Positions 23,554-62,748 of a stretch of 62,748 bases of DNA are shown here, piece after piece. A model generated the notes under the pieces. That model was not told the DNA's origin. It did no database searches and saw only the letters and a list, made by a program, of their open reading frames with translations. Position numbers and translations under genes: made by a program. The stretch comes from Klebsormidium nitens (lineage: Eukaryota > Plantae > Klebsormidiophyceae). Location: assembly GCA_000708835.1 (NCBI GenBank), contig DF237478.1, positions 1 through 62,748 of the forward strand, given 5' to 3'. Every line of letters starts with the position of its first letter. Positions within the stretch are counted from its first letter, which is position 1.

Positions 23554-26500
23554 TCAGTGCCACACCCCCCCTGCTCCGAGCCCCCCCCTCGCAGTGTCCT
23601 CCAGTCCTCCGAAGTGTCCCATGTCATCGGCCCCAAACGTGTCCCGGAACCACGCATCCATGTTATCGCCGTCCCTGACCCCGTTCCTGCCCCCCCCATC
23701 TCGCACGGCCCCTGGGTCCAATCCTCCCGCGTCAAACTGACCCGATCCTGGGAACCAGTCCCCCCCCCCCGCACCGTGCTCTGCCTGCCCCGCCTGCTCC
23801 GGGCTGCGCTCCCGCTCCAGGTACCCCCGCCACGACATGTCGTCCTCGAGGCCCCCCATGGCGAAAGGATCAAATTCGGCCGGCCTGCCCCGCGCTGCGC
23901 CTGTGTCGCCACATTCCCCCGGCCCAAAGCCAGGGGGGTGGCTGTCCCCACCCGAGGGGCCCACGCCCCCGCCAAACCGGTCGTAATTGGAGCCTCCAAA
24001 CCCGTTCCTCGGATCAACAGCATCCGTCTGTCTGGCCAACGTGGCCCCTCCGCCCGGCAGACTGGCAGCACCGTATCCTGCCCCCCCAAAGCCGTTCCTT
24101 TGCTCTGGCGGCGCTGCGTACAGGTCTCCCCCGCTGCGGCTCGCGAAGTCCCCCCAGCGCGCGGGGCTGGACGTGCGGTTGGTGCGCTGCCCCTTGGGGT
24201 GGCCGCTCGCTGCCACCTTTCGGGGGGGCCAGCTGGGCACGAGGCCCTCGCCCCCACCGCGCCCCGCCTCCGCGTACCTCCTAAAGCCCGGCCCCCGCGA
24301 CACCTCCGAGTTCGAATGTACAAACGAAGGAAGCCGGCGCCCTGCTTCCGAGCTTGCCCCCGGCTGAGCGCCGAATCCCGGAGAGCGCGGCATCGAGAAC
24401 GCTACGCTGACCCCCGTGTCGAAGGCGGGCGCTGCTACGAAGCCCCCCTCCAGTGGCGGGGGCCCCGCCCCATGCCGCGGCTCTGCCAGGCCCGGAACTC
24501 GCGCCTCCCCCCAGTACCTCTCCCCCCCGCCCCGTCCCCACAGCCCCTCCCCCTGGGCGGCTCCCCCCGCATGTGCGTCCGCAGTGTGGGGGCTGCTTTG
24601 CCGCTGCCCCTCCGACGCCGGTGCCCCGCCTGATACGGACGGCCCGTCTGCCGCCGCAGCCGCTGCCAGCAGGTCGTGCAAGCCCCGCGCCTCGAGCTGC
24701 GCGGGCCCCTGCTCCGCGGCGCCCCCCGCCCCGCCCCACCCGTTGGCGCTCTTCTTGTCTGCCGGCCGCGCCGCCACCACGAGGTCGTCGTCGTCGTCGC
24801 TGTCGCTGAGGTCGATCACCAGGTTCTTGCCCGTGCCCCCCTCGTCCGCCGCGAGCGCCTTGTTGACGTCGCTCTTGCGGTCGCTACTGCCCCCATCCGT
24901 ATCAGTCCTCGCCAGCTTCGCCGGCCGCTCTGCCGTTCCATTCTCGTGCCGCTCGATCTGCCACGCCCCCTGCGCGTCCCCCCTGTCCCGCTTCAGCCGG
25001 ATCTTCAGGATGCCTGACCCTCGCCGGCCCTCGTCCTCCTTCTTCACCACCGGCGCCGGCTGCTCCTCTGGCGGGGGCGCCACGTACGTCGTCTCCTCGG
25101 GCTTGTGCCACCGCGGCTGCACCCCCCCCGCCGCCTTCTTGGCGTCTCCGCTGAGAAACGCGCGCCAGGCGCCGTCGGGCGCGATCTCGAGGTCGGTGTG
25201 GTCGCTGTCGTGCTCGGCGCTGAAGACGGCGAGCACGCGGTGGAAGTACGGGTCGATGATGAGATCGTCCAGGCTGCAGTTGTGCAGGCAGTGCGGGCAC
25301 TGCCACTTGCGCGCGCGCCGGTTCATCTCCACCAGCGTCGGCAGGTCGAAGCACGCCAGGTGGCTGCACGACCGGAAGCGGCCGGGGACCTGAATGCGCA
25401 CGCCGCTCATCTGGGGAACAAAAGAGGCATCCCGTCAGACTCCACTGTGCCAGTCTGCGCTATCTGACGAGAAAATGATCACTTCTGCTTGAAACACCTC
25501 GTGTTTCCTGTGAGCTCCGTGACTTGCCACTCGCAGCAAGCTGACTACACGGGCTGTGTACAGCGCCACACAAGAACCCAATAAGCCTCGGCACGGGTAC
25601 GCACCGGGTCGCGCACGGAGACGGCCGACTGCAGCGTCATGAGCTCGTCGTCGCTGTCGTCGGCGTCGCCCCCACTGCCGGCCACCACCCGCTTCACCCG
25701 CGCCAGCGCGTCCTCGAAAGTTTCGCCCTCCTCCGGCCCAGGGACGCGCGCCATGATCTGCACGGTCACAACGGCCGCAGGTGAGACGCTCGCTACCGCA
25801 GGGTATCATCTGAAGCGGACATTCATGCTACAGCCGAATGGCGCTTGAGGCATCCTGGTGAAGGCCAACGAAGCAGATACTTGCCCTAATTCGGGAAGAG
25901 AGGCGAATCTCGTAGGAAAGTAGAGATGACGGCAGCCCTCCACTAAGCTTACAAGATCTTAAGGGCCGTCCGCCTTTCAGGGGAGGAAGAAAGGAAAGCA
26001 CGAAACGGGCGGTCAGCGGCATGACGGGAGTGGCTGTGGCGGAGTCTCACCTCCTCCAGAGACCGCTTCTCGATGATGCGTACGCCCACACAAAAGGGCC
26101 GGTCATCATACGCGGACAGGGAGAGCCGGTTGAGGCCATCGCGTGCCACGGTGGCAATCTGCACAACCACCCAGGGCGAGTCAGGCGACGTCGATTGCAG
26201 CAACGGCCACTGCCACTTCCTGGTGCGTCTCACTGCAGCCACATTCCGCTTGCTCGGGCTAGGCAACCAGCAACCGACTCCGCAATTGTCAAAAAGAGCA
26301 GGGGCAGCACGAATTGAGCCACCCACCAACCGTATGGCCATGCTGAACGCTTTTCAACAGCCAATGTGGACACTGTGGTTAATAGACCGCTCAGCTTCAG
26401 CAATCCAAACACACTGCGTTCACCACGTATTGAATCGCTACCTCCACAGATATCACTCGCTTCACATTCCCCCGATTCGATCGCTGCTTCCCGCCGTCAG

Positions 26501-29525: not shown

Positions 29526-29548
29526 CTGCCTGGCATGATATTAATTAA

Positions 29549-30190
29549 GGTGGTAAGACGGTATTCGACAGTGGGAGCATGTTCAAAACCCTAAAACTTG
29601 ATGTAGACATCATGGATTTGCATTCCGTTTTTTCGAGGTGGTTAAGGGCATTGAGAAGCATGTTTGAAGGCCCCTCGAGCTATGATACAACATGGTAGAG
29701 CACAACGAAGCTCTAGAGAAGTTGGCAAAATGTGCAGTTTTCGCTGCAGGACCCCGCCGGCAAAACGGCTCCATAGGNNNNNNNNNNNNNNNNNNNNNNN
29801 NNNNNNNNNNNNNNNNNNNNNNNNNNNNNNNNNNNNNNNNNNNNNNNNNNNNNNNNNNNNNNNNNNNNNNNNNNNNNNNNNNNNNNNNNNNNNNNNNNNN
29901 NNNNNNNNNNNNNNNNNNNNNNNNNNNNNNNNNNNNNNNNNNNNNNNNNNNNNNNNNNNNCCCTACGGAGCCGTTTTGCCGGCGGGGTTCTGCAGCGAAA
30001 ACTGCACATTTTGCCAACTTCTCTAGAGCTTCGTTGTGCTCTACCATGTTGTATCATAGCTCGAGGGGCCTTCAAACATGCTTCTCAATGCCCTTAACCA
30101 CCTCGGAAAAACGGAATGCAAATCCATGATGTCTACATCAAGTTTTAGGGTTTTGAACATGCTCCCACTGTCGAATACCGTCTTACCACC
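29549..30190. mobile_element. Kolobok-type non-autonomous DNA transposon with long TIRs
   Basis: 29549-29777 and 29961-30190 are reverse complements with about 3 mismatches; termini GGTGG...CCACC; TTAA on both sides (29545-29548, 30191-30194). The centre is an N gap. Confidence 0.75.
29778..29960. other. Assembly gap (183 N)
   Basis: Run of n between the two inverted-repeat arms. Confidence 1.
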
Positions 30191-31035
30191 TTAATAGCGA
30201 CCGCGGGGATTCAACCTAGCCTGAGACCGTCATTTCTTTTACCACAAATCAGATCGAGCGGCGCAAACTTAGGACCTGCGCTGAACCCTAAAACTCGCCT
30301 TGACCCGACTTCCGGTTCAAAATTTGAATCAGCCGGCATGGACGCACATGGGTACAGCCCATGAATGACCCCCGTGACCCAGGCCCTGCAAATGAATGCC
30401 GATGTCTGGTGCAGCTGAAGACCGAGTGGTAACCGACGGGGACTATGATTGAATGTTTAGGCCGGTCGAACCAGCGCGGTATACTATGGACCGGGCAATT
30501 AAACCAGTCGATGTACAGTCTGTGATAGTGCCCGGTGGTCTAGCCGATGGTATAGCTAAATTAGCTCTCAGCCTACAAAGTTGAGCTAGGGCCGAGCCGC
30601 CCCTAACACCAAAGTTCCGACCTACGACAGGTGGCGGTCTGTGAATGGATCTTATCCTGCAAACGAATTTTGCTGAAATGCCCCGACCACTTCTCCATCA
30701 AGCAACCGGTGTGGAGTTAGGGGCGGGGTTGCAAGCTACTTTAACAACGCTATGAAACCGGTAATTCTTCGACTTAACTCCGTACATGAGTTGGAAGAGT
30801 TTTCAGAAGTTTTGCATGTTCGCCAACAAATGGACTCACAGTATTACCATCTTGCACCACAGATTACATGTGTAACGTGACAGGTGCAGGCTGGCAGAGC
30901 AAAGCCTCGATCGGCTGCGATGGCCAAGCCAAGGTTGATCTCAGTCAATGTACATAAGCTTGACAATGTTGATTGTGACAAATTCACACAGCTGTACATT
31001 TGGTGACAACCGCGTGCCCAAAGATAAAATGCGCC

Positions 31036-34000
31036 CTATTTGTTGATAGTCCTCAGTTCCCAAGTTCCTGCACCATCTACTAACCGGAGTTCCATACTAT
31101 GGTAGGGAATCAAACCCGGTCGCTGCACACAAAGAGGGGCAGCGTGAGTCATTAAGCAGTACGTGTGAAATCCAACGATAAGAAAGGCCGTGGCTTCTTC
31201 ACGCATTTCGGCAGGCACGGAACCGTAAAGATGCTCTCAACACGCGAGCAGGCGAGGCAATGGAGCCATTTAGAGATATTGAGGGATGTATCCTTGTCAA
31301 CGAAGAGGGATGTATCCTTGTCAACCACCACCCGGTGCCCCGCACAATTGACGGGTGTGCGCGCGCACCTGTGAGATGGTGATGACGGTGATGCCGAGCG
31401 TCTGCGCGGTGCGGTACAGGTACTCCTCCACCTCCACGCTCGTCGCGTTGGTGCACTCGTCCAGCACGCCGAACTTAGGCCGGTGGAAAAACAGCCGCGC
31501 CTGCCACACAAACCCTCACGTCACCGACTGTGCGAACGCTTTGCTCAGCACAGGCCTGCGTCTCAAGATAACATCACGCGGACTGCTTTATGAAGGGTGT
31601 CGCAACCCGGAAATAATGCTTTCTGCAGAGATGGCAAACATCGAGGAGTCGGCCCTCCTGTGCGCGGGGCTATCTCACCATGCCGAGCCGCTGCTGCTCC
31701 CCGAGGCTGAGCATGTCCTCCCAATTGGCGGTCGCGTCCCAGCCGCCCTCCCGCTGCAGCAGGTACGCCAGCTTCACGTCCTCCAGCACCGCGTGGAGCC
31801 GCTCGTCCAGCGCCGCCACCGGGCTGCCTGCACCCAGCACCCCCGCGCAAGTGATGAGCATCCACTATGAAAGCTGAGAGGAGGACGATGTTATCAAGCC
31901 TTGGGAGTGCCTCGAAGACCCGCTGACTTAGCTGCAGACGTCCAGAGTCTAGATCGACTGATGTGCCCAAAAAGTGGCACGAGCAGCGGCAGTACTAAAA
32001 TATTTTAAGCTGGTACACAGGAAATCAATTTCGAAAGTAGTCGAGAGTCTACTCGGCAAGCGAGCTCTACAGCTGATCCGCATAAACAGTCTTGCAAAGC
32101 GCCATGCTCGTCGTGTCTCAAGCCTTGCCACCGGCTGGCAAGACCAGTCCGTCGGGCGCACCTGCGGTGGCCCCGCCGCCGCGCCTCTCCTCGGCCTGCT
32201 GCATTTCGGCCGCGGCCTCGTCGGCGGTGAGGGGGTAGATGAGCTGGTCGCGCAGCGTGCCGACGGCGGTGTACGGCTTCTGGGGCACGTAGAAGATGTC
32301 CTTGCTCAGCCCCGTCGCCGCGTTCACACCCGGCTTGGAGATGCGCCCCGACACGAGCGGCCACAGGCCGCCCAGCACGCGGAAGATGCTGCTCTTGCCG
32401 CTGCCGTTGGGGCCTGGCCAGGGGAGGTGAAGCGATGGCGGATAAGAGAAAGAGACAGGATAGCGACGGAAACGGGAAGCAGGGACTGGAGCCGGAGGGC
32501 AAATCGGGGAGCTTGGGAGGGTGGCCGCAGTAGTTGCCAGAGATCAGCATAGAGGCTTGATGAGCCGGGGACTGTGCATCAGCATAAACAAGAGGGTTTG
32601 ATCATATCTGAGGTCTGAAAGCTGCCACCCGCACACGAATACGATATTCAACACCAAGCAACGCTACCGCACCCAATGCTATCGCCCACCCCGCCAAGGC
32701 TCACCCGTGACGAGGACCGCATTGCCGGGGCGTATCCGCAGCGTGAGCTTGCGCGCGAGCATCTTGCGGTTGGGCGTCACGACGTCGACTTGCGTGAAGG
32801 CAATCTCGTCCTTTGGGGAGCCGCGCGTGGCGTACAGCATCTCGAGGGCGGGCCCGCGCGACGCCTCGATCAGCTCGAGCGCGCTGGGGGAGGGCGACAC
32901 GTGCGCGAGCGGCGCCTCCTCGTCGTGCTGCGCCTCCTGCAGCAGCTCCAGCAGCTCCGACACGCGGGTCACCCCGCCCGACAGCTCCAGGAACCGCCTG
33001 CACCAAGCACAGCGGGAGAGTCGGCGCTATTTGCCAGGAGTCGTAAAAAGTCGGGAAGCGACAGAAACGAAATGCTCGATGAAAAGACTCAGTTTTGTGC
33101 GCTCGCTTGTTCCGCTTACAACGAAGCGGTGAGTAGGGAGGTCCTAAGAAACAACTCGCTTCGTCTGCTGTGACGGTGATGACGAGAATGATGTTCCAGA
33201 CTTTCCGCTTCCAGAAAACAGAAATACATATGGCTTTCGGTTCTTTGCGTAGCAAAACAACATAGCAAGGCGGCTCTTCGCCGGTCCATCTCTCTTCAAA
33301 AAGCCCAGATATTGCCAAGAGAAAAGAAGATACGATTTCCGCGTTTGGGCTTTCCGAGGGCATACGCTTTCTGTTCGTGATCAAGGAGCGAGCCTGCAGG
33401 AGGCATAACATACGGCTCAAGGACCATCTCCTTTCCAAGCCCTCACGCCCAACACTCTCTCAAACCCGCTCGCTTCTGGCTGTACCTGTAGAGCTCGAGG
33501 AGGTCCCCGAAGGCGAGGAAGGAGTGCGACACGACGGAGGCGAGAAAGCGCAGGTCGTGCGCGAGCGCCCCCTGCACTGCGGTGTCGGCGCGGTCGCCGG
33601 GGTGCCCGAGCGCGTACATCAGGCTGAGGCCCCACGTGACGTTGTGCGGCAGCTGCTTCGTCACGAACTCGTCCACCACGCCAAACGCCCACCGCACGCG
33701 CAGCAGCGTGCGCGAGTGCGACAACAACGAGCTGAACCGGCCCTGCGCCACACCAGGGCGGAGGGGCGGTTAGCGGGGGTGGGGAAAGGGAGAAGTCTCG
33801 AGTAACTTCGGGTTTAGGTTTTAGTTTGTTTGAGCCCGGAGACTTTATTTAACTCAACATACACCCAACTCGACATTACATCGAGACTTATCGGAAAGGG
33901 CGGCCTTTGTAATTTGGGCTACGAAATACAGGAGGGAAGCGGAGAAGGGAAGGTAAAGGGGAAGGGGAAGAAAGCAGGCGGGCATACGAGCAATATCACC

Positions 34001-37000: not shown

Positions 37001-40000
37001 GAGGTCTCCAGACACGGGCCCCTGAGTACACCACAGAAGCACCACCCCAGCTATCGGTTGAAACTCAAAAACCTCCTCCGTATTGATTGGTGAGGACCTG
37101 GTGGTGATGCCAAAGCTCCATGGCCACGGCAACCTAGAACTTCTCCTCTCAATCCTGCTTCACGAAGTAGGAAGCCCTGAGCCACTCCAAAACGGAACGC
37201 CGAGCCCCTCTATTGTGGGATGCAAGCAGCGTTCCGTCAGCAAGAGCTGCGGGTCTGCCGTACTGTGGTGTGCTTGCGCTGACCTCCCCCCAGTTGACCT
37301 CCTCGTCCGGCCCGTAGCGGCCGAGCAGGTACTCGAGATCCACCATCGCCAGCAGCTCCTGCATGCGCAGCGCACTCAGCGGCTGCTCCTCCTCTGCCGC
37401 CGTCAGCGGGTAAATCAGCTGGTCCCGCAGCGTGCCTGCACCGCACCGAGAAGCTCAAACACGCGCGGTCTAGCTTGGAAAAGACCTTCCCTGCGGATCT
37501 TACATTTTGCTTGGCTCTCCACCTAATGAGCTGATTGGATGGGCGCAAAGCTAAGTGCCATGCGACGATTTCAGGAGTGCAGAAAGAAACTTGCACTTTC
37601 AGGCCTCCTGCAGTGAGCACAGCCGAACAACGGATGCGAGAAATACAGTGGCGGAAACTTTGTACCGCCATGGACGCCCCCGAATGTGCTGAAAAGCCCA
37701 CCCGGCAACATCCAGGACAACTGGAGCAAACAATCTGTGCGCGGTGCCCCTCACCGACTGCGGTGTAGGGCCGCTGCGGGACGTAGAATATGTTTTTGCT
37801 GAGGCCGTCAACGTCCTTGCTGCCCGGCTTGTGGATGCGGCCTGCGACGAGCGGCCAGAGCCCCCCCAGGACCCGGAAGAGGCTGCTCTTGCCGCTGCCG
37901 TTGGGGCCCGTGATCAGCAGGTTACTCCCCGGCTCCACGTCTAGTGTTAGGTCCTCCACCAAAACGGTGCCCGCGGGGGTGACCACCTGGAGGGAGAGAC
38001 CAAAAGCCTCAGCTGACAGGTATGCGGGCAGCGAGGACTCCTTTACTGGTCAACAAAATGTGCTTGACTGTTCCCTGAGTGGCTTTACAGCCTGAAGCGG
38101 TCCAAAGTGGTGGCTGAAATGTCGGGCTCGGAACGTGTGCGCTTTTCGTATGATATCGGAAGCCGAGCACCAGCGGAGGATCCACTTCTGTTGGACTGGA
38201 TTCGTGTAAGTCGAGCTTGAGATTTTTGAAGAATTTGGATACCCTCGACTTCTTCTCGTCAAAGAAGTCGGTATATCGCAACAGGAGGCTACCAGGCTCA
38301 GGACGTCAAGCTTGGGACGTCAGAATGCGGAAAAATCATTTGGACGACATGCGGTCCAGCTGCCCTTCGCACTTCTTCATCTTTGGAACGACTTTCGCAG
38401 GCCGCTGGTCAGTAGTCCAGCGAGATTGCCCTCGAGCCGGGCTGCGCAAGTTGCACACGGTAAGGCAATCAGACTTAAGAAGCGCAGGCTGCACCTTGAC
38501 ATCTTCGAAGGCGATCCTGTTCCCTTCCACGAATCTGCTGCCCGCCCCTTCCAGCTCCGCTTGCCCGGCCTGCCGCAGCTCCCGAGCCACCGACATGAGC
38601 TCCTTGATGCGGTCAGCGTACCCACTGCAGAGTCACAAGAAGCATGGCAGCCTTCAACATCCTTAGGACCGCCCGTCAGCAGCGGAGTTGAATGAGGGAG
38701 GATCTAAACAGAAAGAAAAGCTTGGAGGATGGCGTTTAAGTAAAGCGCGGGTTTCTCTCGTGTTTCTCTCGATCGTAAATTCAGCAAGAAAGCCTGTCTG
38801 TTTCCTCGACCCAAGTCTGTAGTCACACCTCGTCTTCGTTCGTCGACCTCGTAAGCAGGCTAGCCATCAAACAAGCTACCGCCCAACCCAAAGTGGCTCC
38901 AATGAACTCTTCGCCGCGAAACAATCGTACCTTCATTTTGCCTTGGCCTTTAGAAGCGCATCGCACCCCTCCGGCGCCGCTTTTTCGCCGCCTCACCTGA
39001 GCCTGGCGAGCCGGCGGGAGCTGCCCGCGAGCGTGCCCACCGCCCCGAACAGCGAGATGACGACGCTGGTGTGGTACCGCATGTTGCTCAGCATCTCGGC
39101 GCGGCCCAGCGTGTCGCTGCTGGGCCGTAGATTGCCTCCGAAGAACGGCCCGATAATGAGCACCACCGCCCACGTGGCCCCGCAGTACTTGAGCACGAAG
39201 TCCTGGATGCAGCCGAACCACCACTGCGTGTGCAGCACCGCCGAGTGGTGCCGAATCAGTTGCCGGAAGCGCGCGCTTATAGTAGAAGCCTGCGGGCGAC
39301 AGTGAAAGGTGCACGGGTGGGAGTTTATTCAGCGCAGACCTGACTCCGCTTTTGTCGCTCCATCGAAGAAGGTGCGAGAGGCAAGCATTGAACAGCATAC
39401 GAGGAGCTCCTTAAAACCTCAAAGCTTTCGAGACTATATCTCCTCATTTCGACGTCCAAGGAACACAACGACGTACAATCTGCTCGGAACTGCCTTCGCT
39501 GAGCAGGCGACAACCAATCCTGAACGACGGAAAGGGACCGGATCGGAGGAACCAAGCAGAACCACGCCGGCAGGTTTGATCTTCCGCTCCATTGCAACGG
39601 CACCTCGGGGCTCACCTCCCTGTCCTGCCCCCCATAGAATGCGATGCTTTCCGAGTGCGTGCGTAAGCGTGCGTGCAGGTGCCTGTAGTCGCCCTCCAGC
39701 TGTTGCTCCTCGCCCATCAGCTTTCCGAACGGAGGAGATAAACCACCCGTGATCAGGCCTGCGCCTGCGGACAGGAAGATGCGCCACGTGTCGAATTCCA
39801 GGTTCTCAATTGCTCCGTAGCTAAGCAGAAGCATTCAATAGCTAGCTCTAGGACTCCGCTGCAATGATTTCCAACAGGCAGGGCTCAAAAATGACGCAAG
39901 AATTACGGAGATCGCCTACAACATCCCCAAGACTGACAATTGTCACCAGATACGCATTGAAAGCTTGAACACTTTACAGCAGCTTGGGGACGAACAGCGG

Positions 40001-46241: not shown

Positions 46242-48333
46242 ATGGCGCAAGCAGCCACTCGGTCTGTACAATCTTTGGTAACGTCTTCCTTGCTGCGTTC
46301 GAAGCAGGCTTCTGCCTATTCAGAACGCCAGCTGGGAGGCTGCAATTCCCAGGTGCTCTCTTATCCACGCCGCCGCTCGCTGACTTCCAGTTCTGCACGC
46401 AGCGAGCAGCCCAATTACGCATCGCCAAAAGACTACAGCTCTCCCAAGGACTACAGCTCGCCCGCAAGCTCAGACCAGCGTCGATCAGCGCCACCTGCAG
46501 AGGGTGCAGCAAGTTCTGGAGGATCTGCTCCAAGTTTTTGGGAGTATCAGGCTCCTCGCGATTACAGGTTGAGCATTTCACCTGCCTTGAACATGTTGCA
46601 TTACCTCCAGGCCATCGATTGCAGGATCAGCCTACGGTGCTTGTCTGCACTCTGTTCTAGAATTGCCGTCTATGAAGATGATGATTGATTGTTGGATGGA
46701 GATCAAACATTGGGGCCTGATACAGAAGTTTGATGCATCAAAGGGCAGGAGGATATCTGATAAGCAAGGGGGAAGATAGGCCCCTTGCTTCCTCAGGCCA
46801 GTCCATGCAATATGTGCAGTGTCCTTCTGATGCTGTTCAAAGTTGATCAACCTGTTCATGAAAGATGCATGTAAGTGAATCTTTCACATGCATGCTGTTC
46901 GGACACCTTGCAGGTCCCCTGGCAGCTACAAGTCTCCTGGTGATTACGGCAGCCCTGCCCCGTACGGCCCAATAGACAGGGCCGGTAGCATTGGAAGCCC
47001 AAAAGGCGGGGTCCGTAGCATTGAAAGCCCAAAAGCCGGGGCCAGTAGCATTGAAAGCCCAACAGGCGGGGCCGGTGGCAGTGCAAGCCCAACAGGCGGA
47101 TCCGGTGGCAGTGCAAGCCCAACACGCGGATCCGTTGGCAGTGCAAGCCCAACAGGCGGGGCCGGTCAGTGCAAGCCCAACACGCGGGGGAGGTGTCAGT
47201 GCAAGCCCAACAGGCGGGGCCGGTGTCACTGCAAGCCCAACAGGTGGGGGAGGTGGCAGTGGAAGCGGAGGCAGCGGCGGTGGGGACGGCAGCATGGGGG
47301 AAGGGCCTGCAGGGGGAGGAGGCAAAGCCAAAATGTCGCAGACTTTGACCATCTTGTACGCTGCACTGGTGGCAAGTGAGGTTTTGCTGTTCCTTTCCTG
47401 CTGTCATTACTGGGTGAAACGTTCAAACAGAACCTGTTCACTGCTGGTCTTTGCTACAATACCTTCTCAAGAATCAAAAACGGTAGGAGGTTTCAGGGGA
47501 TGGCGAAACAGACTTGAGAGATCTTCATCTCTTTCAACCGTTTGCCAGCATAAAAATCTATTCATGTGACTGTTAAGTTGACCAGCTGTTTGCCTTCTTT
47601 GTGGCAAAGCACACTTATGGCCAGATTCATTTTTGGGGAGGATGCCGTGGCCCCCAACCCACTGCTTGCAACCAGACTGGATGGAACTCTGTCTGAACGC
47701 ATTCCAGTGTGGGTGGCTGATTGATTGTAGATCTGAAGCAACTTCCAAGCAACTGCGCTGGCAAGACACAGCTCGGAAGGTAAACGCATTGAACTTGTCC
47801 TAATTGTTTCGCTTGTTCATAATGCAGTTGGGGGTGTGGTCGCCTACATGAAGAAGGGCAGCAAAGACTCGCTGATTGCAGCGTCTGTATCGTCCATCCT
47901 GCTCGTCTCCGCAGCTGCGCTTATTGGGTCCAATCACGTACTCTATGGTTCGATCCTAGGACTTGGTGAGGATTTCCGTCCTTCTGTTGGTGAGATGTTT
48001 GTAAAAGCTGGCGCAAGTCCAGCATCTTAGTGCAGCTCTCTGCGAGTCATCATTGATCATTGTTCGCAAGTTTCTTGGATTGGCATCTGAGTTAGTCATC
48101 GATGCCGCAGGCTCTCTTAACTATTTTCGTCGCCAAATTGCTAGCAAACTGCCAATCCTTCTTGAGGTAAAGAATTGCGATCCGTTCTTGCAGCTGTGTC
48201 GGGGGCCCTTCTATACGTCATGGGTTCCCGTTTTCTCAAATCAAGGAAAGTAATGCCAGCAGGTCTTGTTTCTGCCATCTCGCTGATTATGAGCTTTGGA
48301 TACTTTCACGGGATACAAAAGGCATTTCACTAG
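46242..48333 (+). CDS. FAX: Plastid fatty-acid export (FAX) / TMEM14 family protein, with an apparent frameshift in exon 2
   Basis: Transit-peptide-like exon 1, Gly-rich linker, then KMSQTLTILYAALVAIGGVVAYMKKGSKDSL and ALLYVMGSRFLKSRKVMPAGLVSAISLIMSFGYFHGI-stop, typical of Tmemb_14/FAX. Confidence 0.88.
46981..47248 (+). repeat. Coding minisatellite, 9 x 30 bp (AGGSASPTGG-like)
   Basis: Units start at 46981, 47011, 47041, 47071, 47101, 47131, 47161 (28 bp), 47189 and 47219. Confidence 0.95.
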
Positions 48334-56800: not shown

Positions 56801-58090
56801 AGGTGAAAGTGTCCGGCTTGAAAGGCCTGCAGAGCCTCAACAAGGACCCCGACCCGAATAACCCCATCGAAAGCAAAGAGACCAGGTGAGCGCGCGCTAT
56901 GCTGGGCTCCTGGCGAGAGGTGCCGAATAGTATTTGGAGATTTTTGACTCCTTCTAGTTTGTTGCAACTAGCACTTCTGTCGGCAGGGCGGAACGGTTGC
57001 GCCAAGAAAGTGCGACAGCAGAGCTGGCAGGTTGGCGGGTGCAGATCGAGGGTTGGCGGAGTGGCAGATCAAGGGTGGCCGGGTTCAAGCTCCGTCTGAA
57101 GGCATCAAGACTGGATTTGTACCGCGCAGCGAGGACCGTCGTGTTTGCCCTCCAGCTAGCCAGTTTTGCAAAGGTGCACCCATTGACCGCTCTTCATAGG
57201 CGGTGAAAGTTGTGTATCCAAAGGCTCGAGCTGCCGCTGTTTCAAGCATCTGCTTCCCCGCATACCCTGACGCCGTCGTTCCGGCCCGCGCAGGGACGAG
57301 GTGACGTTCCCCGGCTTCGTAGACGTCATGTACAAGGACGCCCCCGAGGAGCTCATCCTGGACTCCGGCCTCGGCTACTCCATTGCGCTACAAAGCACCG
57401 GGTGAGCGCCGGGCATCCAACACGGAAGACCTTGGCGCGAGCGGCAACGGCCTTGCTTTGGGCTGACAGTTTCCTAAAGCGACTAACATCGCGTCTTTGG
57501 CACAGGACAAAAGTGGACCTTTGTGAGGACCTTTCTGACAGCAGTGTCCAAAGCACTATGCGTTTGGGCGTCACCGCGGTGCATGTGGGCTTCGTTATCG
57601 CCAAGATGTGCCGTTTGAGAGTGTCGGCATCGGCCTTCTGTGTGCAGGTGGAAGGACGCGGTCACATGGAGCCCGTACAAGACCATGGAGTCCTGCTACA
57701 AGGAATTCGTCTGCGTGGAGAATGCACAGGTAAGAACGACTCTACTCGATGCGCGACAGCTTCCTGCTTGTGTCCAAGCACCGGTCTCCAATCGACGACA
57801 TTTTAGACGCCTTCCTGTCGAACCTTACAATTATCATCACCTGCGTGCACGATGATTACCCTTACTGTTTCTGCACTGCTTGAAGGCAGAGTTTGAAGGC
57901 TTAAGTTCGTGGCTGTCTGAGTCTTTGTGGATGAGAAACGTGAATGCCAAACGGGACGATCAGGGGAAGCGGTATGTGAGAGGACCAAGAGATCCGCATT
58001 GAATCTGCTCCTTTTGCTGCGCAGCTGGACCCGGTGGTGGTGGAGCCGGGCAAGTCGTGGAAGGCGGAGCTCAGGCTGCAACCACACTAA
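53900..58090 (+). CDS. Aldose 1-epimerase family / glucose-6-phosphate 1-epimerase (probably plastid-targeted); 5' exon unresolved
   Basis: Exons give VYLFGAVVTAW, KFDGSKPISGGIPHCFPQFGPG..QQHGFARN, FDFTAALHTYF, DAVTWSPY..FVCVENAQ and VVVEPGKSWKAEL; catalytic His/His/Glu motifs of the family are present. Confidence 0.92.
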
Positions 58091-60252
58091 CGGCCGGCAG
58101 GCCGGACAAAATCTCTTTTTGTTTAGACACCAAACGAGCATTCTTTTGGAAAAAGATTCAGTTGCCCCTTGTACGGCAAAAGCTGGCCGGAAAAGGTCAA
58201 TGCGAGAGTAGGCGCGCTCGGTCATAACTTTAAGACGTGTTGCTAGAGAGTCGGGCACATGGCTCAAAACTTTCGGTTGGTGGCAGTCCCCAACGTTGCT
58301 AGCTTACGAGCCCTGACTTGCGAGGCCGGGCTTTGACGAAGTCTTCGGGTGCTTACTGAAGCCGCATGAATTCTTGTACTGTCTAAACGAAACTCTATCA
58401 GCCGGCATGGCCCGTTTCGCACGGTGCTCATGCCACCATCGCTGCATGCTACAAGTTCAAAGTAGGACTCAACTTCGAAAGGACATCGCGGTGTGATCAC
58501 GCTGTCCGTGTTTATGAATATTTTGGCATGAAACAGATGGGTCATGCAATGTGACGTTTGTATACGAGCTCTGCTGTTTCCTTCGCATGTTGCTCGCCTC
58601 ACAAAGACGTGGCATACACAGACTTAATGTGCATGCCACCGATCGACCGATCGAGTGTGGCCCTCAGATTTGAGAGCGGCATTGAGCTTCCCGCAGCTTC
58701 TTTCTCCTGCATTCGACATCACGATCGATCCTGTATGAATCTGCAGAGTCCTGCGCGGCTTTAATAAGCTGTGAATAGGATACTCCAATTGACGTCCGGC
58801 CGAGCCTGACAAATTGGACTCGATCATATACTTTACACAGCTACTACCTAGATCAGACAAGGAAATTCACTGGCTGCAATCAAGTTCGATCGCTCGGATC
58901 TGTTAAACTCCTTTAAGATTTTAAGAATGATGTGAGATCATTGATTGACAATGCGAGCCGGATCCCGGCCTAATTGTGGGCGGGATTGACCCTATGCGAA
59001 GTTCGTACTCCAGATGAGTCACCAGAGCTTCGCTAGTGCTGGCACGTACATATACCCGTCCACAACCAGCCCACGGGCAAAGCGCACAGTCGCGCTAGAA
59101 CCGTAGGATGCCAAGATGGCCGCCGTCGGCGAATTTGGGGCGTTGAATGAATTAATTCGGCAAAGATCTGATAAATGATAGGCCGAAATCGAGGAGGAAG
59201 AAGGTCATTGTCCAGCGCCTCTCTTTGGAGGAGCTATTTTGAATTTGAATTCTATGGCGGCAGGCGCCTAGCGGCTTAAAACCAGCCGCTGATCTTCGCT
59301 ACAGCGAAGGGTGACCATTAGATCTGCAAGGTCGCCGACTGTGGGCCATCGATATGGATTGCGCAGGGTCCCGGGTGGCTCCTGAAATGGTCAAAGGCTG
59401 GTAGGGTGCATGGCACAGGTCAAAGACCTGCAGCATCAGATTGGTGTGGTCCACCAGCACTCAAATTTGCCTCCAAGTTTTGCGTTGCGCCATGCATACT
59501 TGACAATACGACCGAGGTCTCCACCGGAGCTTTTGTCCAGACTCCAAGGGTTGTGGCCTCTACACAGGACCTAAGGTGAGTGAAACATGCAGACAATGCA
59601 TGTTTTTGGTATAAGCCTTACAGCCTGGCAGAACACATCGTCCCATGCTTTGTTGTCATTGTCATATCAATTGTTGGTGCATGGGCACAAGCTTCTGGAT
59701 GTCCTGTCTACGTCAGTTTCCTTGCCGAGTCAGTTTCCTTTGAGGTGTCAGCGCAAAGAACTAGAGATTAGATGCATGTCAGAGGCAGGTAAGGGTAGGG
59801 TTGACATGCTCATTTGTTTCTGTGGCAGAGTTTGGCTCCTGTGCTTGCTGCTCCTCTTGTGCTGGTTGGCTGCTGATGTTGCTTGTGGATTTGATGCTGC
59901 TTGTTGCACTTGGGTCACAGCTTGCGTGTGATGTTTGTGAAGCCGCGTGTTCTGGTTTTTGCGAGAAGAAGCATGGTGCTACTTATTTCATCTACTCTAA
60001 GGTCTGGCTGCTGATCTTTTCAATACTGCAGTCTCCTAGACATATGCTTCTGGATTGTGGTTGACAGTCTGAAAGGAAAGCTGTCCAGATGGGCAACGGA
60101 GTCTGGTTGGTCAAAGAGGCATTCAGCACGGCGAGCTACTCCTCCAGTGACAAGTGCGCCAAGCGGTGCTTTCTGATTGATTCAGGATTGATAATCTTAC
60201 TGATTTTGTGTTCTCTCGCCTGCAGGTATCCTCAATTGCATTCTCTGTCAGC

Positions 60253-61383
60253 ATGGCAGGCGGCTTGGGGAGGCGCAGGAGAAAAGAGCCAAGCTTTGCT
60301 GATGACCATCAGCGTCGCCCTAAGAAAACCAAGGTTGAGCTAAAAGAGCTTGCTGACAGGCGTTTGGGACTGGTTCTCACAGAGCTTCATGGCAGAGCCT
60401 TTGCCTTTTGTCCAGTGGATGGGAAGAAGCTTGTGGGAGCCTCAAAAAAGTGTCCCCAGTGTCAAGTGAAATACTTGAACTCTTATCTCTCACAAGCAGG
60501 GCCCAGCAAGTTTGCCTGTTTGTACGACGCTCGGGACATAGCTTCCTTCTGGAGAAGAAAGATCTTTTGGCGTCTGGGGGGCACCAATCATTCTGGTGTG
60601 CTGTGGACCACACAGCCTTTTGTGCCTCTGCCTGCTTTTGAGGCCATCTTTTCGGAGGATTGGGAGCAGGCTGCAGTGAAGACAGCCACTGTAGAGACAC
60701 ATGTCAGAATTTTGGAAACAACAAGAGGGGTCGTTGAGTTCTGTGCATTCAATCTTGTTAACGAGAAGCGAGGCAATGCCTGCTGCAAGCTGCTGCCTAC
60801 AGGTGAGGTTTTGGTGGTCGTGCCTCCAGTTGAGGTCACCCATACATATAGCATTGAAGCCTCGGGGGCAAGAGTTCACTTTGTCTACGGCTGGGTGAAG
60901 ATGACAGTTGCTGGAGTGATCAGCAGAGCAGAAGACATGTTAGAGCCGGCACAGGGGTGGGATCACGTAGAGAAGTGGATTAGAGACAGCGTGTTGGACA
61001 TGCAGGATCTGGAGATGGGAGTGTCACCAGAAATGGTTGAGGCTTCAAAGGCTATTCTCAGGTCTGAGTATGAAAGTGACGAGGCTGCTCGGCATGCACG
61101 GTCTGAGCGAGGTATGAGGGACGAGCACATTGTCATGCCGCGGCCGGAGCCAAGGCCGCAGGAAGAGAGGAGGCGCAGACAAGCAGCTGAAATGCATGCG
61201 GGGGGCTTGGAAGATGGTTGGCATAATCTGCCAACAGATGAAGGTGAGGGGGCTACTTGGAGCACGTACGACATTCTGTCTTTGCATGGCAATGAATTGC
61301 GTCTCCTGCATTCTGCATTGCATTGTGCCAATCTATCCGAGCCAGAAGTGCGTGCGGACCAAGAATGCAAGTACGATACATAG
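60253..61383 (+). CDS. Orphan 376-aa protein with basic NLS-like start and CPxD-x(11)-CPxC zinc-ribbon-like motif
   Basis: Uninterrupted ORF; ATG 28 nt after a strong acceptor at 60225, with a matching upstream donor GTGAGT at 59576 (5' UTR intron). GRRRRK..RRPKK, FCPVDGKKLVGASKKCPQC. No family recognised. Confidence 0.6.
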   Translation: MAGGLGRRRRKEPSFADDHQRRPKKTKVELKELADRRLGLVLTELHGRAFAFCPVDGKKLVGASKKCPQCQVKYLNSYLSQAGPSKFACLYDARDIASFWRRKIFWRLGGTNHSGVLWTTQPFVPLPAFEAIFSEDWEQAAVKTATVETHVRILETTRGVVEFCAFNLVNEKRGNACCKLLPTGEVLVVVPPVEVTHTYSIEASGARVHFVYGWVKMTVAGVISRAEDMLEPAQGWDHVEKWIRDSVLDMQDLEMGVSPEMVEASKAILRSEYESDEAARHARSERGMRDEHIVMPRPEPRPQEERRRRQAAEMHAGGLEDGWHNLPTDEGEGATWSTYDILSLHGNELRLLHSALHCANLSEPEVRADQECKYDT

Positions 61384-61671
61384 CTTCCACTTGCTTGTCC
61401 CCCCCTTCAGTGCACGCCCCAGAACGCGCACGTGCGGACATTCTGCACTCGTCATTAGGGGGTTTGTACTGACGGGGGGGCTGGCTGACAACCGATATGC
61501 CGACAATTGACAACATACAGCACTCTTGGCGCATGGCACTGTGGCGCGTGCATTCAGAAAGTGGATTACAATGCCACTTTCTACTCTCGTACAATTGTTT
61601 TTTGTCTCTTGTTCTCAGCTATTGTTGCTTCTCGTTTCCGAGTTGCTTCATAAAACTAACTTTTTTCCAAA

Positions 61672-62748
61672 CTAAATCGGCCTTGCGAAAGCGGAGATTC
61701 TTCCCGCGCGGCCTCTACCCCTTCTTCCGCCGCCAGCGCCCCGCGCGCCAGTAGCGCCCGTGCCCGTGCCCGTGCCCCTGCCCGTGCCACCAGCGCCCGG
61801 CGCGCCTGTGCCTGCACGCTCACTAGCGCTTCTGCCGGTGCCCCTGCCAGCCCCCCTGCCCGCCCCCCTGCCAGCAGCGCCGGCGCCCCTTCCTCCCGTA
61901 GCCCCCGTGCCGCTTTCCCCCACTGCGCCCGGGGGATCAACTGAGGCAGGCCCCTCCAACTCGGCCTGGGAGTCGCCCGCCAGGCCTTCCAAGCCCTCCG
62001 GCGTCCGGTTCTCCGACTCGACCCTCAAGCGAGCGTTGCTCTGCTCACCCGGAGACTCCTCCGAGTCGACAGAGGCGAGTTTCTCCACCATTTCGACGTA
62101 GCCAGTGTAGACCCGGGCGATGTCCGGACCGAACTTTTCGAGTTTGCTCTCAAGCTGTGCTCTGCTCCGGCTTGGCAGCTGCCCCCTCCTCTCAGCTCAC
62201 TCGATCGCCTGCTCTGCAACCTTCTCCCCGTCCCCGATGAACCGCCTCTCGTTTCTGCTCAGTGGCATTGCGACCGTTTGCTCCAAAGCTAGCCGTTCCC
62301 TCCCCTTCGCCATCACTTGCAAATTGCGCCCCTTCTGTTGCCGTTCGTCTACCAACCGCCGATTGGTGAACAACTGCATATCCGTCTTTCCCTCTTTCAG
62401 CTTGTGCTCGACAAACTGCTGTGACATGTCACTGAAGCTGACGGGGAAGCGGCGCACCATGTCAGGTACGTGCACCATCCCCAGATGCATATAGAGTGTG
62501 GCCAGGTCCGCCCCGAGCTGCGAGCTGAAGCTGTACACGTACGCCGCCGCCCTGTCTTGGACCACGATGCTTTTGGCCAGCCGTTCGCCGTCGTCGCTAG
62601 GGTTGTTGAGGGGGCGGAGGAGCTCGGCGTATAGAGCTGCGAGGTTGTCCCAGATGATCCTCGCGTCAGCCCGCTTGCTGGCGTCCGTGATGGCGATGTC
62701 GAGGAATGCGTTGTATGCAGTTGGATGCAGGAGAACGCGAGCTTCTTT
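61672..62748 (-). mobile_element. C-terminal part of a RAG1/Transib/Chapaev-like DDE transposase, truncated by the window edge, with an in-frame TGA at 62197-62199
   Basis: The frame from 62748 reads KEARVLLHP..WDNLAALYAELL..QDRAAAYVYSFSSQLG.DLATLYMHLGMVHVPDMVRRFPVSFSDMSQQFVEHKLK. T-x-Y-x-H-x4-H-V-P..S-x-Q-x-x-E matches the H-H zinc ligands plus catalytic Glu region of RAG1 (TNYFHKTLAHVPEII..ASEGNESGNK, from memory) and Transib/Chapaev. Confidence 0.75.

What the first reader, a model, noticed from the sequence alone, without database searches (positions are those of the whole stretch)
59576..62748. Tail-to-tail pair: RAG1-like transposase plus an orphan partner gene (ProtoRAG-like layout in an alga)
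Seen: a minus-strand ORF with the RAG1/Transib C-terminal catalytic motif ends at 61672, and a plus-strand spliced 376-aa ORF ends at 61383. They are convergent with 288 bp between stops. Known: RAG1/RAG2 and lancelet ProtoRAG have this convergent two-gene arrangement, whereas Transib and Chapaev elements usually carry one gene. Inference: this may be a two-component transposon with a non-RAG2 cofactor, in a lineage where I know of no RAG-like element. The partner shows no kelch or PHD signature, so it would be an analogue, not RAG2.
Basis: partly seen in the sequence, partly recalled or inferred. Interest (0 to 1): 0.85.

Follow-up and report, generated by a model that had tools for sequence, protein, structure and literature searches.

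The report
Two-gene RAG1-fold transposon, broken copy
The window ends in a truncated, stop-interrupted copy of a roughly 6-7 kb cut-and-paste transposon of the alga Klebsormidium, whose cutting enzyme folds like the immune recombinase RAG1 and is always paired with an unknown partner gene, although that fold is shared by the whole CACTA/Chapaev/Transib transposon group.

Summary
A 376-aa plus-strand ORF (60253-61383, unspliced) faces a minus-strand ORF that ends at 61672, with 288 bp between the stops. The minus ORF is the last exon of an 850-950 aa transposase. It keeps the Y-x-H-x4-H-x-P ... E motif that maps to RAG1 H937/H942/E962. It also has an in-frame TGA at 62197-62199, and exon 1 is lost at the contig end.

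The two genes form one unit. In 11 other loci, four of them K. nitens scaffolds (named the window's own genome by earlier scan notes), partner and transposase lie tail-to-tail. Their divergence co-varies (rho 0.94), and both are under purifying selection. Similarity starts abruptly at a CACAACCAGCC terminus, at 59061 in the window. Complete copies are 5.9-7.2 kb.

A model of the full-length K. nitens homolog matches RAG1 at Z 21, BbRAG1L at 19 and HzTransib at 17.6. However, CACTA and Chapaev models match about as well, no Pfam family reaches threshold, and the flanking duplication is 2 bp (4 of 6 copies), not 5 bp. The partner is not a kelch propeller.

I read it as a distinct lineage of the known CMCT (CACTA-Mirage-Chapaev-Transib) clade, not a ProtoRAG relative. 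A cofactor role for the partner is inferred, not shown. Earlier follow-ups of this scan reached the same reading on other DNA of this genome (s1-316222, s1-326889).

The parts
59061..59072 (+). Partner-side terminal inverted repeat (CACAACCAGCCC); left end of the element
   Evidence: Similarity among 9-12 loci starts abruptly here, with no similarity upstream. Pattern and nhmmer profile hit at 59061, E 3.3e-12. The same ~12 nt occur inverted at the transposase-side end of complete copies.
59061..59585 (+). Conserved non-coding subterminal leader, with CCGTNSG boxes at about +41 and +63 from the end
   Evidence: About 70-77% DNA identity to other copies, although synonymous sites are saturated, and stops occur in all frames. 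No Rfam match.
60253..61383 (+). Partner gene, 376 aa, single exon: basic N-terminus, C-x2-D/H ... C-x2-C zinc ribbon, orphan alpha/beta domain, three-helix C-terminal part
   Evidence: Homologs at 29-70% identity are always linked to the transposase. pN 0.18-0.50 against pS about 0.75-0.8. No Pfam match. AF2 pLDDT 59 with no fold match. Small RNA-guess contigs lie at 60681-60870 and 61008-61262.
61384..61671 (.). 288-bp spacer between the two convergent stop codons
   Evidence: Coordinates.
61672..62748 (-). Last exon of the RAG1-fold DDE transposase (C-terminal about 358 codons); exon 1, which carries both catalytic Asp and the CxxC, is missing beyond the contig end
   Evidence: 72-73% aa identity to K. 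nitens KFL_002680090 residues 615-865. Exon 2 of homologs starts at E-A-R-V-L-L-H-P, one codon from the window end. dN/dS is 0.11-0.23.
62407..62487 (-). ZnH2-type His-x4-His (62485-62487, 62470-62472) and catalytic Glu (62407-62409)
   Evidence: Found by regex in the window and in 28 family proteins. The distant family member P0058 aligns to RAG1 922-970, placing these residues on H937, H942 and E962. Sub-threshold PF12940 hits cover profile positions 546-601.
62197..62199 (-). Premature in-frame TGA (Arg CGG in K. nitens); this copy is broken
   Evidence: The DNA contig X1 record 3 covers 61895-62419 with no differences. The annotated model P0007 splices around it into another frame.
61675..61920 (-). 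Arg/Gly-rich low-complexity C-terminal tail ending in ...ARPI
   Evidence: Translation. The same kind of tail and ending occur in P0065, P0067, P0009 and P0014.

Best explanation
Window 59061-62748 is the partner-side two thirds of one copy of a 5.9-7.2 kb cut-and-paste DNA transposon family of Klebsormidium.

Anatomy of the family:
- Termini are 5'-CACAACC...GGTTGTG-3', with inverted repeats of about 12 nt.
- CCGTNSG boxes lie about 40-45 nt inside each end, and the two subterminal leaders differ from each other.
- Two convergent genes are encoded. One is an 850-950 aa, two-exon DDE transposase with the RAG1/Transib-type architecture: RNase H fold, second Asp followed 19 residues later by CxxC, then His-x4-His and Glu. 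The other is a 350-376 aa partner with a basic N-terminus and a zinc ribbon.

Inferred mechanism. The transposase binds the CAC ends, excises the element and reinserts it with a 2-bp stagger. The partner is an element-encoded accessory factor, acting in end recognition at the subterminal boxes or in assembly or regulation of the transposase, as TnpA does for En/Spm or RAG2 for RAG1.

What is shown:
- gene linkage and orientation;
- element ends;
- the fold of the transposase;
- conserved catalytic and zinc residues;
- purifying selection on both genes and their co-divergence.

What is inferred:
- the cleavage chemistry;
- the 2-bp stagger (4 of 6 copies);
- any role of the partner.

This particular copy is inactive, because of the premature TGA, and is truncated by the assembly. 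[quoted passage not shown] It is not a ProtoRAG/RAGL element.
For: Linkage:
- Partner and transposase are convergent in L001-L006, L008-L011 and L013 as well as the window.
- L007 and L012 are cut by contig ends.
- Four of these loci are K. nitens scaffolds with different flanks.

Co-divergence and selection:
- pN of the two genes across 10 loci correlates at Spearman 0.94, p 5e-5.
- pS is saturated at 0.62-0.82.
- Transposase dN/dS is 0.11-0.23.

Ends:
- Conservation begins abruptly at CACAACCAGCC.
- 13 partner-side and 7 transposase-side ends were found by profile.
- Six bounded copies were recovered.

Flanking duplication:
- 2 bp exact in 4 of 6 copies.
- 0 of 265 mismatched pairings reach 4.

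Fold (AF2 core pLDDT above 85):
- Foldseek's top 49 PDB hits are all RAG1, BbRAG1L or HzTransib, with E down to 1.9e-10.
- VIA-align gives Z 21.2 over 379 residues at rmsd 3.6-3.9 against mouse RAG1 533-979, 19.2 for BbRAG1L and 17.6 for HzTransib.
- The next best are the P element at 10.5 and Hermes at 6.

Residues:
- D348, D429, C448, C451 and H553 are invariant in 8 full-length proteins.
- The H/H/E motif is present in all 28 sequences that span it.
- The motif maps to RAG1 H937/H942/E962.

Clade placement:
- Atlas models of RAG1 (TM 0.55), CACTA Transposase_21 (0.49-0.51) and DUF1280 (0.47) all match.
- DUF1280 corresponds to Chapaev and clusters with RAG1 (PMC3985635).
- The CMCT definition is C(2)C plus H(3-4)H, CA..TG termini and 2-5 bp duplications (PMC12730594).

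Decay of individual copies:
- a stop in the window copy;
- a stop and a frameshift in L002;
- a frameshift in the L009 partner;
- a stop in the L010 partner.
Against: - No copy was caught moving: there is no empty site and no polymorphic insertion.
- The copies seen are all old relative to each other (saturated dS), so current activity is unproven.
- The 2-bp duplication fails in L009, which has a 3-bp GTC, and in L010.
- No HMM-level similarity to any described transposase family reaches threshold, so placement rests on fold, motifs and termini. No phylogeny was possible.
- The partner model is poor (pLDDT 59). Nothing shows that the partner binds DNA or the transposase, so it could be cargo.
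- Transcription evidence is thin: four small contigs at depth 2-4.5 in runs only guessed to be RNA.
Confidence: 0.8

Rival explanations
1. The partner is cargo rather than a transposition cofactor. It would be a gene carried because it helps the element in another way, such as countering silencing, as proposed for the TET/JBP genes carried by KDZ, Plavaka and EnSpm-like elements in fungi. The transposase alone would suffice for cutting and pasting.
For: - Carriage of non-transposase genes by CMCT and KDZ elements is documented (PMC12730594).
- There is no detectable DNA-binding fold beyond a small zinc ribbon.
- No interaction data exist.
Against: - Linkage and orientation are kept across lineages down to 29% partner identity, with tight co-divergence and purifying selection.
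- No stand-alone homologs were found.
- The basic N-terminus plus zinc ribbon fits a nuclear nucleic-acid-binding protein.
Confidence: 0.3
2. The pairs are domesticated, immobile host genes: a multigene family derived from a transposon and kept for a cellular function. The window copy would then be a pseudogene of that family.
For: - Every copy seen is highly diverged from the others (saturated dS) yet under purifying selection.
- Copy number per lineage appears low, and DNA depth over the element is not above that of the flank (14.5 against 19.3).
Against: - The CACAACC ends and about 500 bp of non-coding subterminal sequence are conserved in every lineage while the flanks are unrelated. That is expected only if the ends are still used.
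- 2-bp duplications are intact in 4 of 6 copies.
- Copies carry stops and frameshifts.
- Contigs repeatedly break inside the element, and a 95%-identical variant contig exists in the same DNA run.
- A candidate 324-bp non-autonomous derivative exists.
Confidence: 0.1
3. It is a true member of the RAG-like/Transib lineage, sister to or inside Transib/RAGL, and the orphan partner replaced or preceded RAG2.
For: - Best PDB matches are RAG1, then BbRAG1L, then Transib. The core is colinear with RAG1 533-979, and more residues align to RAG1 (379) than to Transib (336).
- The only sequence-level leads are RAG1 and Chapaev.
- The layout is convergent and the ends are CAC-type.
Against: - No CMC-type transposase appeared among the solved-structure matches, so RAG1 may win the PDB search by default.
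- Against predicted models, CACTA and Chapaev-type proteins match about as well.
- The duplication is 2 bp, not 5 bp.
- Beyond CACA the terminus does not follow the heptamer.
- No Pfam RAG1 model reaches threshold.
- The partner is not a propeller.
Confidence: 0.12
4. These are two unrelated host genes that merely sit next to each other, with the conserved synteny reflecting orthology.
For: Both are annotated as ordinary hypothetical genes in K. nitens.
Against: - At least nine paralogous transposase genes exist in K. nitens.
- The pair recurs at unrelated sites, and similarity ends exactly at the inverted CAC termini.
Confidence: 0.02

Closest known systems
CMCT clade of DNA transposons (CACTA/EnSpm, Mirage, Chapaev, Transib, plus Plavaka, ESTA, Lanisha; Kojima 2025, PMC12730594)
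   Same: [quoted passage not shown]
- 5'-CA..TG-3' termini.
- Duplications in the 2-5 bp range.
- Some lineages carry a second gene.
   Different: - No Pfam model of any named lineage reaches threshold.
- The terminus CACAACC and the orphan partner gene match none of the lineages described in the papers I could read.
RAG1 / RAG1-like (ProtoRAG, RAGL) and Transib transposases
   Same: - Overall fold, with Z 21 to mouse RAG1 and 17.6 to HzTransib.
- Spacing from the second Asp to CxxC is identical (19 residues).
- His-x4-His lies 20-21 residues before the Glu.
- The ends start with CAC.
- The two-gene layout is convergent, as in ProtoRAG.
   Different: - The duplication is 2 bp instead of 5 bp.
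- There is no significant sequence similarity.
- The partner is not a kelch propeller and has no PHD.
- No heptamer/nonamer with 12/23-type spacing was found: the inner box sits only 3-5 nt further in at one end than at the other.
Chapaev (Pfam DUF1280), placed with RAG1 by Majorek et al. 2014 (PMC3985635) and in the Transib superfamily by Kapitonov and Koonin 2015 (PMC4411706)
   Same: - Nearest named clusters by language-model features (0.94 and 0.92).
- Weak DUF1280 hits in 2 of 22 family members (E 0.0019).
- RAG1-like core.
   Different: - The hits are below Pfam threshold.
- No Pfam zinc-finger model matched the N-terminal exon, so there is no sign of a Chapa or RING domain.
- The papers I read describe Chapaev in animals.
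- They describe no obligate second gene.
CACTA / En-Spm two-protein system (TnpD transposase plus TnpA subterminal-repeat binder); this comparison is from my own knowledge
   Same: - Two element-encoded proteins.
- Repeated short boxes in the subterminal regions.
- CAC-type ends.
- Predicted structures are similar (TM 0.49-0.51).
   Different: - No Transposase_21 or DUF4218 hit.
- The ends are not CACTA.
- The duplication is 2 bp, not 3 bp.
- The partner is unrelated to TnpA as far as the tests go.
- The genes are convergent rather than products of one transcript.
Lanisha (Maumus, McDaniel and Carey 2020, Repbase Reports; moss Ceratodon purpureus; GenBank MT647524)
   Same: A streptophyte cut-and-paste lineage said to resemble EnSpm and placed in CMCT.
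   Different: Unknown. Neither its sequence nor its description was reachable with these tools, so identity with this family is not excluded.

Membership tests
RAG1/Transib superfamily | RNase H-fold DDE core with a ZnC2 (CxxC after the second Asp) and ZnH2 (His-x4-His before the Glu) module | tested here: met
   D348, D429, C448, C451 are invariant. H702, H707, E728 of P0064 and the window equivalents are present. They map to RAG1 H937/H942/E962 through P0058. Z 21 to RAG1 533-979. The window itself holds only the His/His/Glu part.
RAG1/Transib superfamily | Significant sequence similarity to the RAG1/Transib core (Pfam PF12940 and PF26100-family models at threshold) | tested here: not met
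   No hit for the window fragment or for P0064. A profile of the family against PDB sequences found nothing. Only sub-threshold PF12940 hits occur in the distant members P0054 (23.4 bits, cut-off 25) and P0058 (15.9 bits).
RAG1/Transib superfamily | 5-bp target-site duplication | tested here: not met
   0 of 6 bounded copies have an exact 5-bp repeat; 4 of 6 have an exact 2-bp repeat. The sample is small.
RAG1/Transib superfamily | Termini resembling the RSS heptamer CACAGTG / Transib CACAATG | tested here: inconclusive
   The termini are CACAACC, so only the first four bases agree.
RAGL / ProtoRAG | RAG2-like partner (six-bladed kelch propeller, often with a PHD) | tested here: not met
   No kelch or PHD Pfam hit in 12 partner sequences. 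The AF2 model is alpha/beta plus a helical part. Best PDB Z is 5.2, on the helical part only. Atlas TM is at most 0.26. The model confidence is low.
RAGL / ProtoRAG | Convergent transposase and partner genes inside the inverted repeats | tested here: met
CMCT clade (PMC12730594) | [quoted passage not shown] | tested here: met
CMCT clade (PMC12730594) | 5'-CA..TG-3' termini and 2-5 bp duplications | tested here: met
   CACAACC...GGTTGTG in all bounded copies; a 2-bp repeat in 4 of 6 and a 3-bp repeat in 1.
Chapaev | Pfam DUF1280 (PF06918) at threshold | tested here: not met
   Best E 0.0019, in 2 of 22 members, below threshold. Atlas feature scores of 0.94 and 0.92 are leads only.
CACTA / EnSpm | Transposase_21 / DUF4218 domains, CACTA ends, 3-bp duplication | tested here: not met
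   No Pfam hit. The ends are CACAA and the repeat is 2 bp. There is only a structural resemblance, TM 0.49-0.51.
Plavaka | Termini TGT..ACA or CATCA..TGATG (PMC12730594) | tested here: not met
   The termini are CACAACC. No Plavaka model is among the Pfam hits shown.
Lanisha | Similarity to the Ceratodon reference element MT647524 | not testable with these tools

The most novel reading that the evidence does not exclude
The orphan partner is an obligate subunit of a RAG1-fold transposase: a functional analogue of RAG2 with an unrelated fold. That would mean the two-subunit organisation of RAG-type recombinases arose more than once, or predates the split of the Transib/RAG and Chapaev/CACTA lineages, and that it exists in the plant lineage.
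Probability: 0.25. Interest if true: 0.8.

Novelty: new variant of a known kind. Interest (0 to 1): 0.5.

Why it matters
RAG1-RAG2 is the textbook case of a transposase that needs a second element-encoded protein, and how that partnership arose is still debated. Here a RAG1-fold enzyme in a streptophyte alga has kept one unrelated partner gene, in the same convergent layout, through divergence deep enough to saturate synonymous sites. That gives an independent system in which to ask what a second subunit does for this class of enzyme.

The finding also adds an unclassified lineage, with defined ends, to the CACTA-Mirage-Chapaev-Transib clade, and it explains several hypothetical genes in the Klebsormidium annotation. 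The window copy itself is broken and truncated, so its value is as one more member of the family.

Tried and rejected
- Spliced partner gene starting at 59576. Rejected: all homologs start at M-A-G-G (60253), and the upstream block has stops in all frames.
- 5-bp duplication. Rejected.
- 12/23-like asymmetry of the ends. The inner CCGTNSG box sits at about +41 on the partner side and +44 to +47 on the transposase side. The difference is only 3-5 nt, so this is not claimed.
- A second terminus in the window at 26162 (CACAACCACCCAGGG). The end profiles do not support it at E up to 1.
- RNA joint 62072^62399 as an intron that removes the stop. It has no GT..AG on either strand, comes from a single contig at depth 2.2, and would delete conserved residues, so it is not accepted.
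- Scan of metagenome contigs for more copies. The first alignment was too diverse; the second found no relative.
- A profile search of the word-indexed protein database found no organism beyond Klebsormidium and unnamed JGI/Logan contigs. Cluster look-up gave no taxon for the distant relatives.
- Rfam on 58900-62748: nothing.
- Subterminal k-mer enrichment gave only AAATTT.
- Extending the window to the right: impossible, because the window end is the contig end.

Full report
**What is in the window**

The ORF listing and a six-frame translation show a plus-strand ORF, 60208-61383. Homologs fix its real start at ATG 60253 (M-A-G-G...), which gives 376 aa in a single exon.

On the minus strand, one frame is open from the window end 62748 to a stop at 61672-61674, apart from one TGA at 62197-62199. 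The two stops are 288 bp apart. The 'spliced' structure and the 59576 start are not supported. The in-frame stop was missed.

That stop replaces an Arg codon (CGG) of the K. nitens homolog. It is present without differences in a contig of a DNA run. The public gene model for this locus (P0007) avoids it by splicing into another frame.

**The minus ORF is the last exon of a large protein**

tblastn aligns it to K. nitens KFL_002680090 (P0064, 946 aa) at 72-73% identity over residues 615-865. The alignment runs straight through the stop. The homolog has two exons, and exon 2 begins E-A-R-V-L-L-H-P, one codon from the window end. The window therefore ends in the intron. It lacks exon 1, which carries both catalytic aspartates and the CxxC.

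An exhaustive HMMER search with the fragment found 57 cluster representatives. Almost all are short gene calls.

**The two genes are one unit**

The partner has six database homologs at 41-70% identity, including K. nitens KFL_002680080. I fetched the contigs for all partner homologs and for six transposase homologs.

tblastn of both proteins against all loci shows the partner and the transposase tail-to-tail in L001-L006, L008-L011 and L013 as well as the window. L007 and L012 are cut by contig ends. Four of these loci are different K. nitens scaffolds. K. nitens holds at least nine transposase paralogs.

Non-synonymous divergence of the two genes from the window copy co-varies across 10 loci (Spearman 0.94, p 5e-5). 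Synonymous sites are saturated (pS 0.62-0.82), while pN is 0.18-0.50, and transposase dN/dS is 0.11-0.23. These loci are related, so the correlation is not a set of independent events. Individual copies carry stops or frameshifts.

**Element ends**

Upstream of the partner gene there is a block of about 500 bp that is alignable between copies (about 70-77% identity) but has stops in every frame.

In a multiple alignment of nine loci, similarity begins abruptly at CACAACCAGCC, and nothing aligns outside it. In the window this terminus is at 59061.

The same roughly 12 nt occur inverted beyond the transposase start in complete copies. Profiles of the two ends recover 13 partner-side and 7 transposase-side termini.

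Bounded copies:
- L001 8949-16156 (7208 bp)
- L002 6542-12967
- L009 2151-8306
- L011 8897-14885
- L013 8554-14484
- L010 73-7622, less certain

Both ends carry a CCGTNSG box about 40-47 nt inside, and otherwise the two subterminal regions differ. The box offset between the ends is only 3-5 nt, so I do not claim a 12/23-like arrangement.

Flanking direct repeats are exact at 2 bp in four of six copies (GA, CG, TT, AG), at 3 bp in one copy (GTC), and never at 5 bp. None of 265 mismatched pairings of left and right flanks gives four matches.

**What the transposase is**

No Pfam family and no PDB sequence matches the window fragment, P0064, or a profile of the family.

An AlphaFold2 model of P0064 residues 140-840, built with 22 homologs, has a core pLDDT above 85. 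Foldseek's top 49 PDB hits are all RAG1, lancelet BbRAG1L or HzTransib, with E down to 1.9e-10.

VIA-align results:

| Target | Z | Aligned residues | rmsd |
|---|---|---|---|
| Mouse RAG1 (533-979) | 21.2 | 379 | 3.6-3.9 |
| BbRAG1L | 19.2 | | |
| HzTransib | 17.6 | 336 | |
| P element transposase | 10.5 | | |
| Hermes | 6 | | |

In eight full-length proteins D348, D429, C448, C451 and H553 are invariant. D429 to C448/C451 is the same 19/22 spacing as RAG1 D708 to C727/C730; the RAG1 numbering here is from my own knowledge.

The motif Y-x-H-x4-H-x-P ... Q-x2-3-E is present in all 28 sequences that span it, including the window. A distant family member, P0058, aligns by phmmer to RAG1 chains only (the top 15 PDB hits, E 0.03-0.27). 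That alignment places the motif on H937, H942 and E962. P0054 and P0058 hit Pfam RAG1 below threshold on the same profile region.

**Why this is not specifically RAG-like**

No CMC-type transposase appeared among the solved-structure matches, so RAG1 may win the PDB search by default.

Against predicted structures of the ESM Atlas, the model matches these about equally:
- chordate RAG1: TM 0.55, 444 residues
- plant CACTA proteins with Transposase_21/DUF4218: TM 0.49-0.51
- a DUF1280 cluster: TM 0.47

By language-model features the nearest named clusters are DUF1280 (0.94, 0.92) and then RAG1 domains (0.90). The window fragment alone gave RAG1_ZnH2 at 0.89. Weak Pfam hits in family members are DUF1280 (E 0.0019), RAG1 (0.0036) and DUF1258 (0.11).

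The literature gives the frame:
- Majorek et al. equate DUF1280 with Chapaev and DUF1258 with Mirage, and place DUF1280 with RAG1 (PMC3985635).
- Kapitonov and Koonin put Chapaev inside the Transib superfamily (PMC4411706).
[quoted passage not shown] Its members share C(2)C and H(3-4)H motifs, CA..TG termini and 2-5 bp duplications (PMC12730594).

The element meets every one of those clade features. It meets none of the lineage-specific ones that I could test.

Lanisha, from the moss Ceratodon, could not be compared. RAG-like elements in the pelagophyte Aureococcus and Transib-like proteins in plants are already reported (PMC9435367). Plavaka-like CMC elements are reported in streptophyte algae (PMC13519894).

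**The partner**

It has these parts:
- a basic N-terminus;
- a zinc ribbon, C-x2-D/H ... C-x2-C, with weak zinc-ribbon Pfam hits in single members;
- a conserved alpha/beta domain of about 200 residues;
- a three-helix C-terminal part.

The AF2 model is poor (pLDDT 59). It finds nothing in the PDB (best Z 5.2, on the helical part only) or in the Atlas (TM at most 0.26). Atlas feature hits to MYND fingers (0.89) are leads only. It is not a kelch propeller.

Its function is therefore inferred from context alone. Strict linkage, co-divergence, purifying selection and the absence of stand-alone homologs favour an accessory role in transposition. Cargo remains a live alternative.

**Reads**

Contigs of a DNA run cover the stretch. 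They break at 59088-59117, just inside the terminus. They become fragmentary from 61780 onward. One 101-nt contig differs at five positions (62431-62445). Together these point to closely related copies in the same sample. Contigs of the related loci also tend to end inside the element.

Runs guessed to be RNA show a strongly covered host exon at 58018-58479. Over the element they show only four small low-depth contigs, all inside the two coding regions. One non-canonical joint (62072^62399) is not an intron.

**Verdict**

The ProtoRAG-like framing is too specific.

This is a distinct two-gene lineage of the CMCT clade with a RAG1-type fold, CACAACC ends and a probable 2-bp duplication. The window holds a broken, truncated copy.

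Other follow-ups of this scan reached the same reading on other pieces of the same genome (s1-316222, s1-326889). I saw those notes only after my own end and duplication analysis.

Noticed in passing
window 58018-58479: An exon covered at depth about 150-570 by contigs of three runs guessed to be RNA, spliced at 58018. It is a highly expressed host gene ending about 580 bp before the transposon end.
   Followed up: no
window 29544-30195: A 326-nt inverted repeat, 99% complementary, with zero spacer: a perfect palindrome of 652 nt. It may be an assembly artefact or a hairpin-forming element.
   Followed up: no
window 46959-47296: About eleven tandem 30-nt units (60-90% alike) inside overlapping ORFs on both strands.
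   Followed up: no
window 32329-32414 and 37823-37908: An 86-nt direct repeat at 86% identity, 5.5 kb apart, inside minus-strand ORFs. Read on the minus strand it encodes a G-P-N-G-S-G-K-S-S Walker A motif, so these are probably two paralogous ATPase domains.
   Followed up: no
window 62072/62399: One low-depth contig of a run guessed to be RNA joins 62072 to 62399, skipping 326 nt that include the premature stop. There is no GT..AG on either strand. It could be a deleted copy or an artefact.
   Followed up: partly
window 62431-62445: A 101-nt contig of the DNA run differs from the window at five positions, pointing to a second copy about 95% identical in the same sample.
   Followed up: no
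L010:73-396: A 324-bp unit bounded by a transposase-side-type end (TACAACC...) and an inverted partner-side-type end (profile E 5.7e-7). It is a candidate non-autonomous derivative of a related subfamily, with no flanking repeat. It makes the left boundary of the full-length L010 copy uncertain.
   Followed up: partly
L001:16862-21386: Right next to the K. nitens copy lie a gene with a weak KDZ transposase hit and a gene with a D5_N (primase-helicase) domain. This may be the KDZ element with replication genes noted elsewhere in this scan (s1-270328).
   Followed up: no
L003:7097-7693; L005/L006:5459-9315: Retroelement genes (RVT_1; gag-type capsid and aspartic protease) lie directly outside the partner-side end of two copies, so the insertions sit in repeat-rich neighbourhoods.
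   Followed up: no
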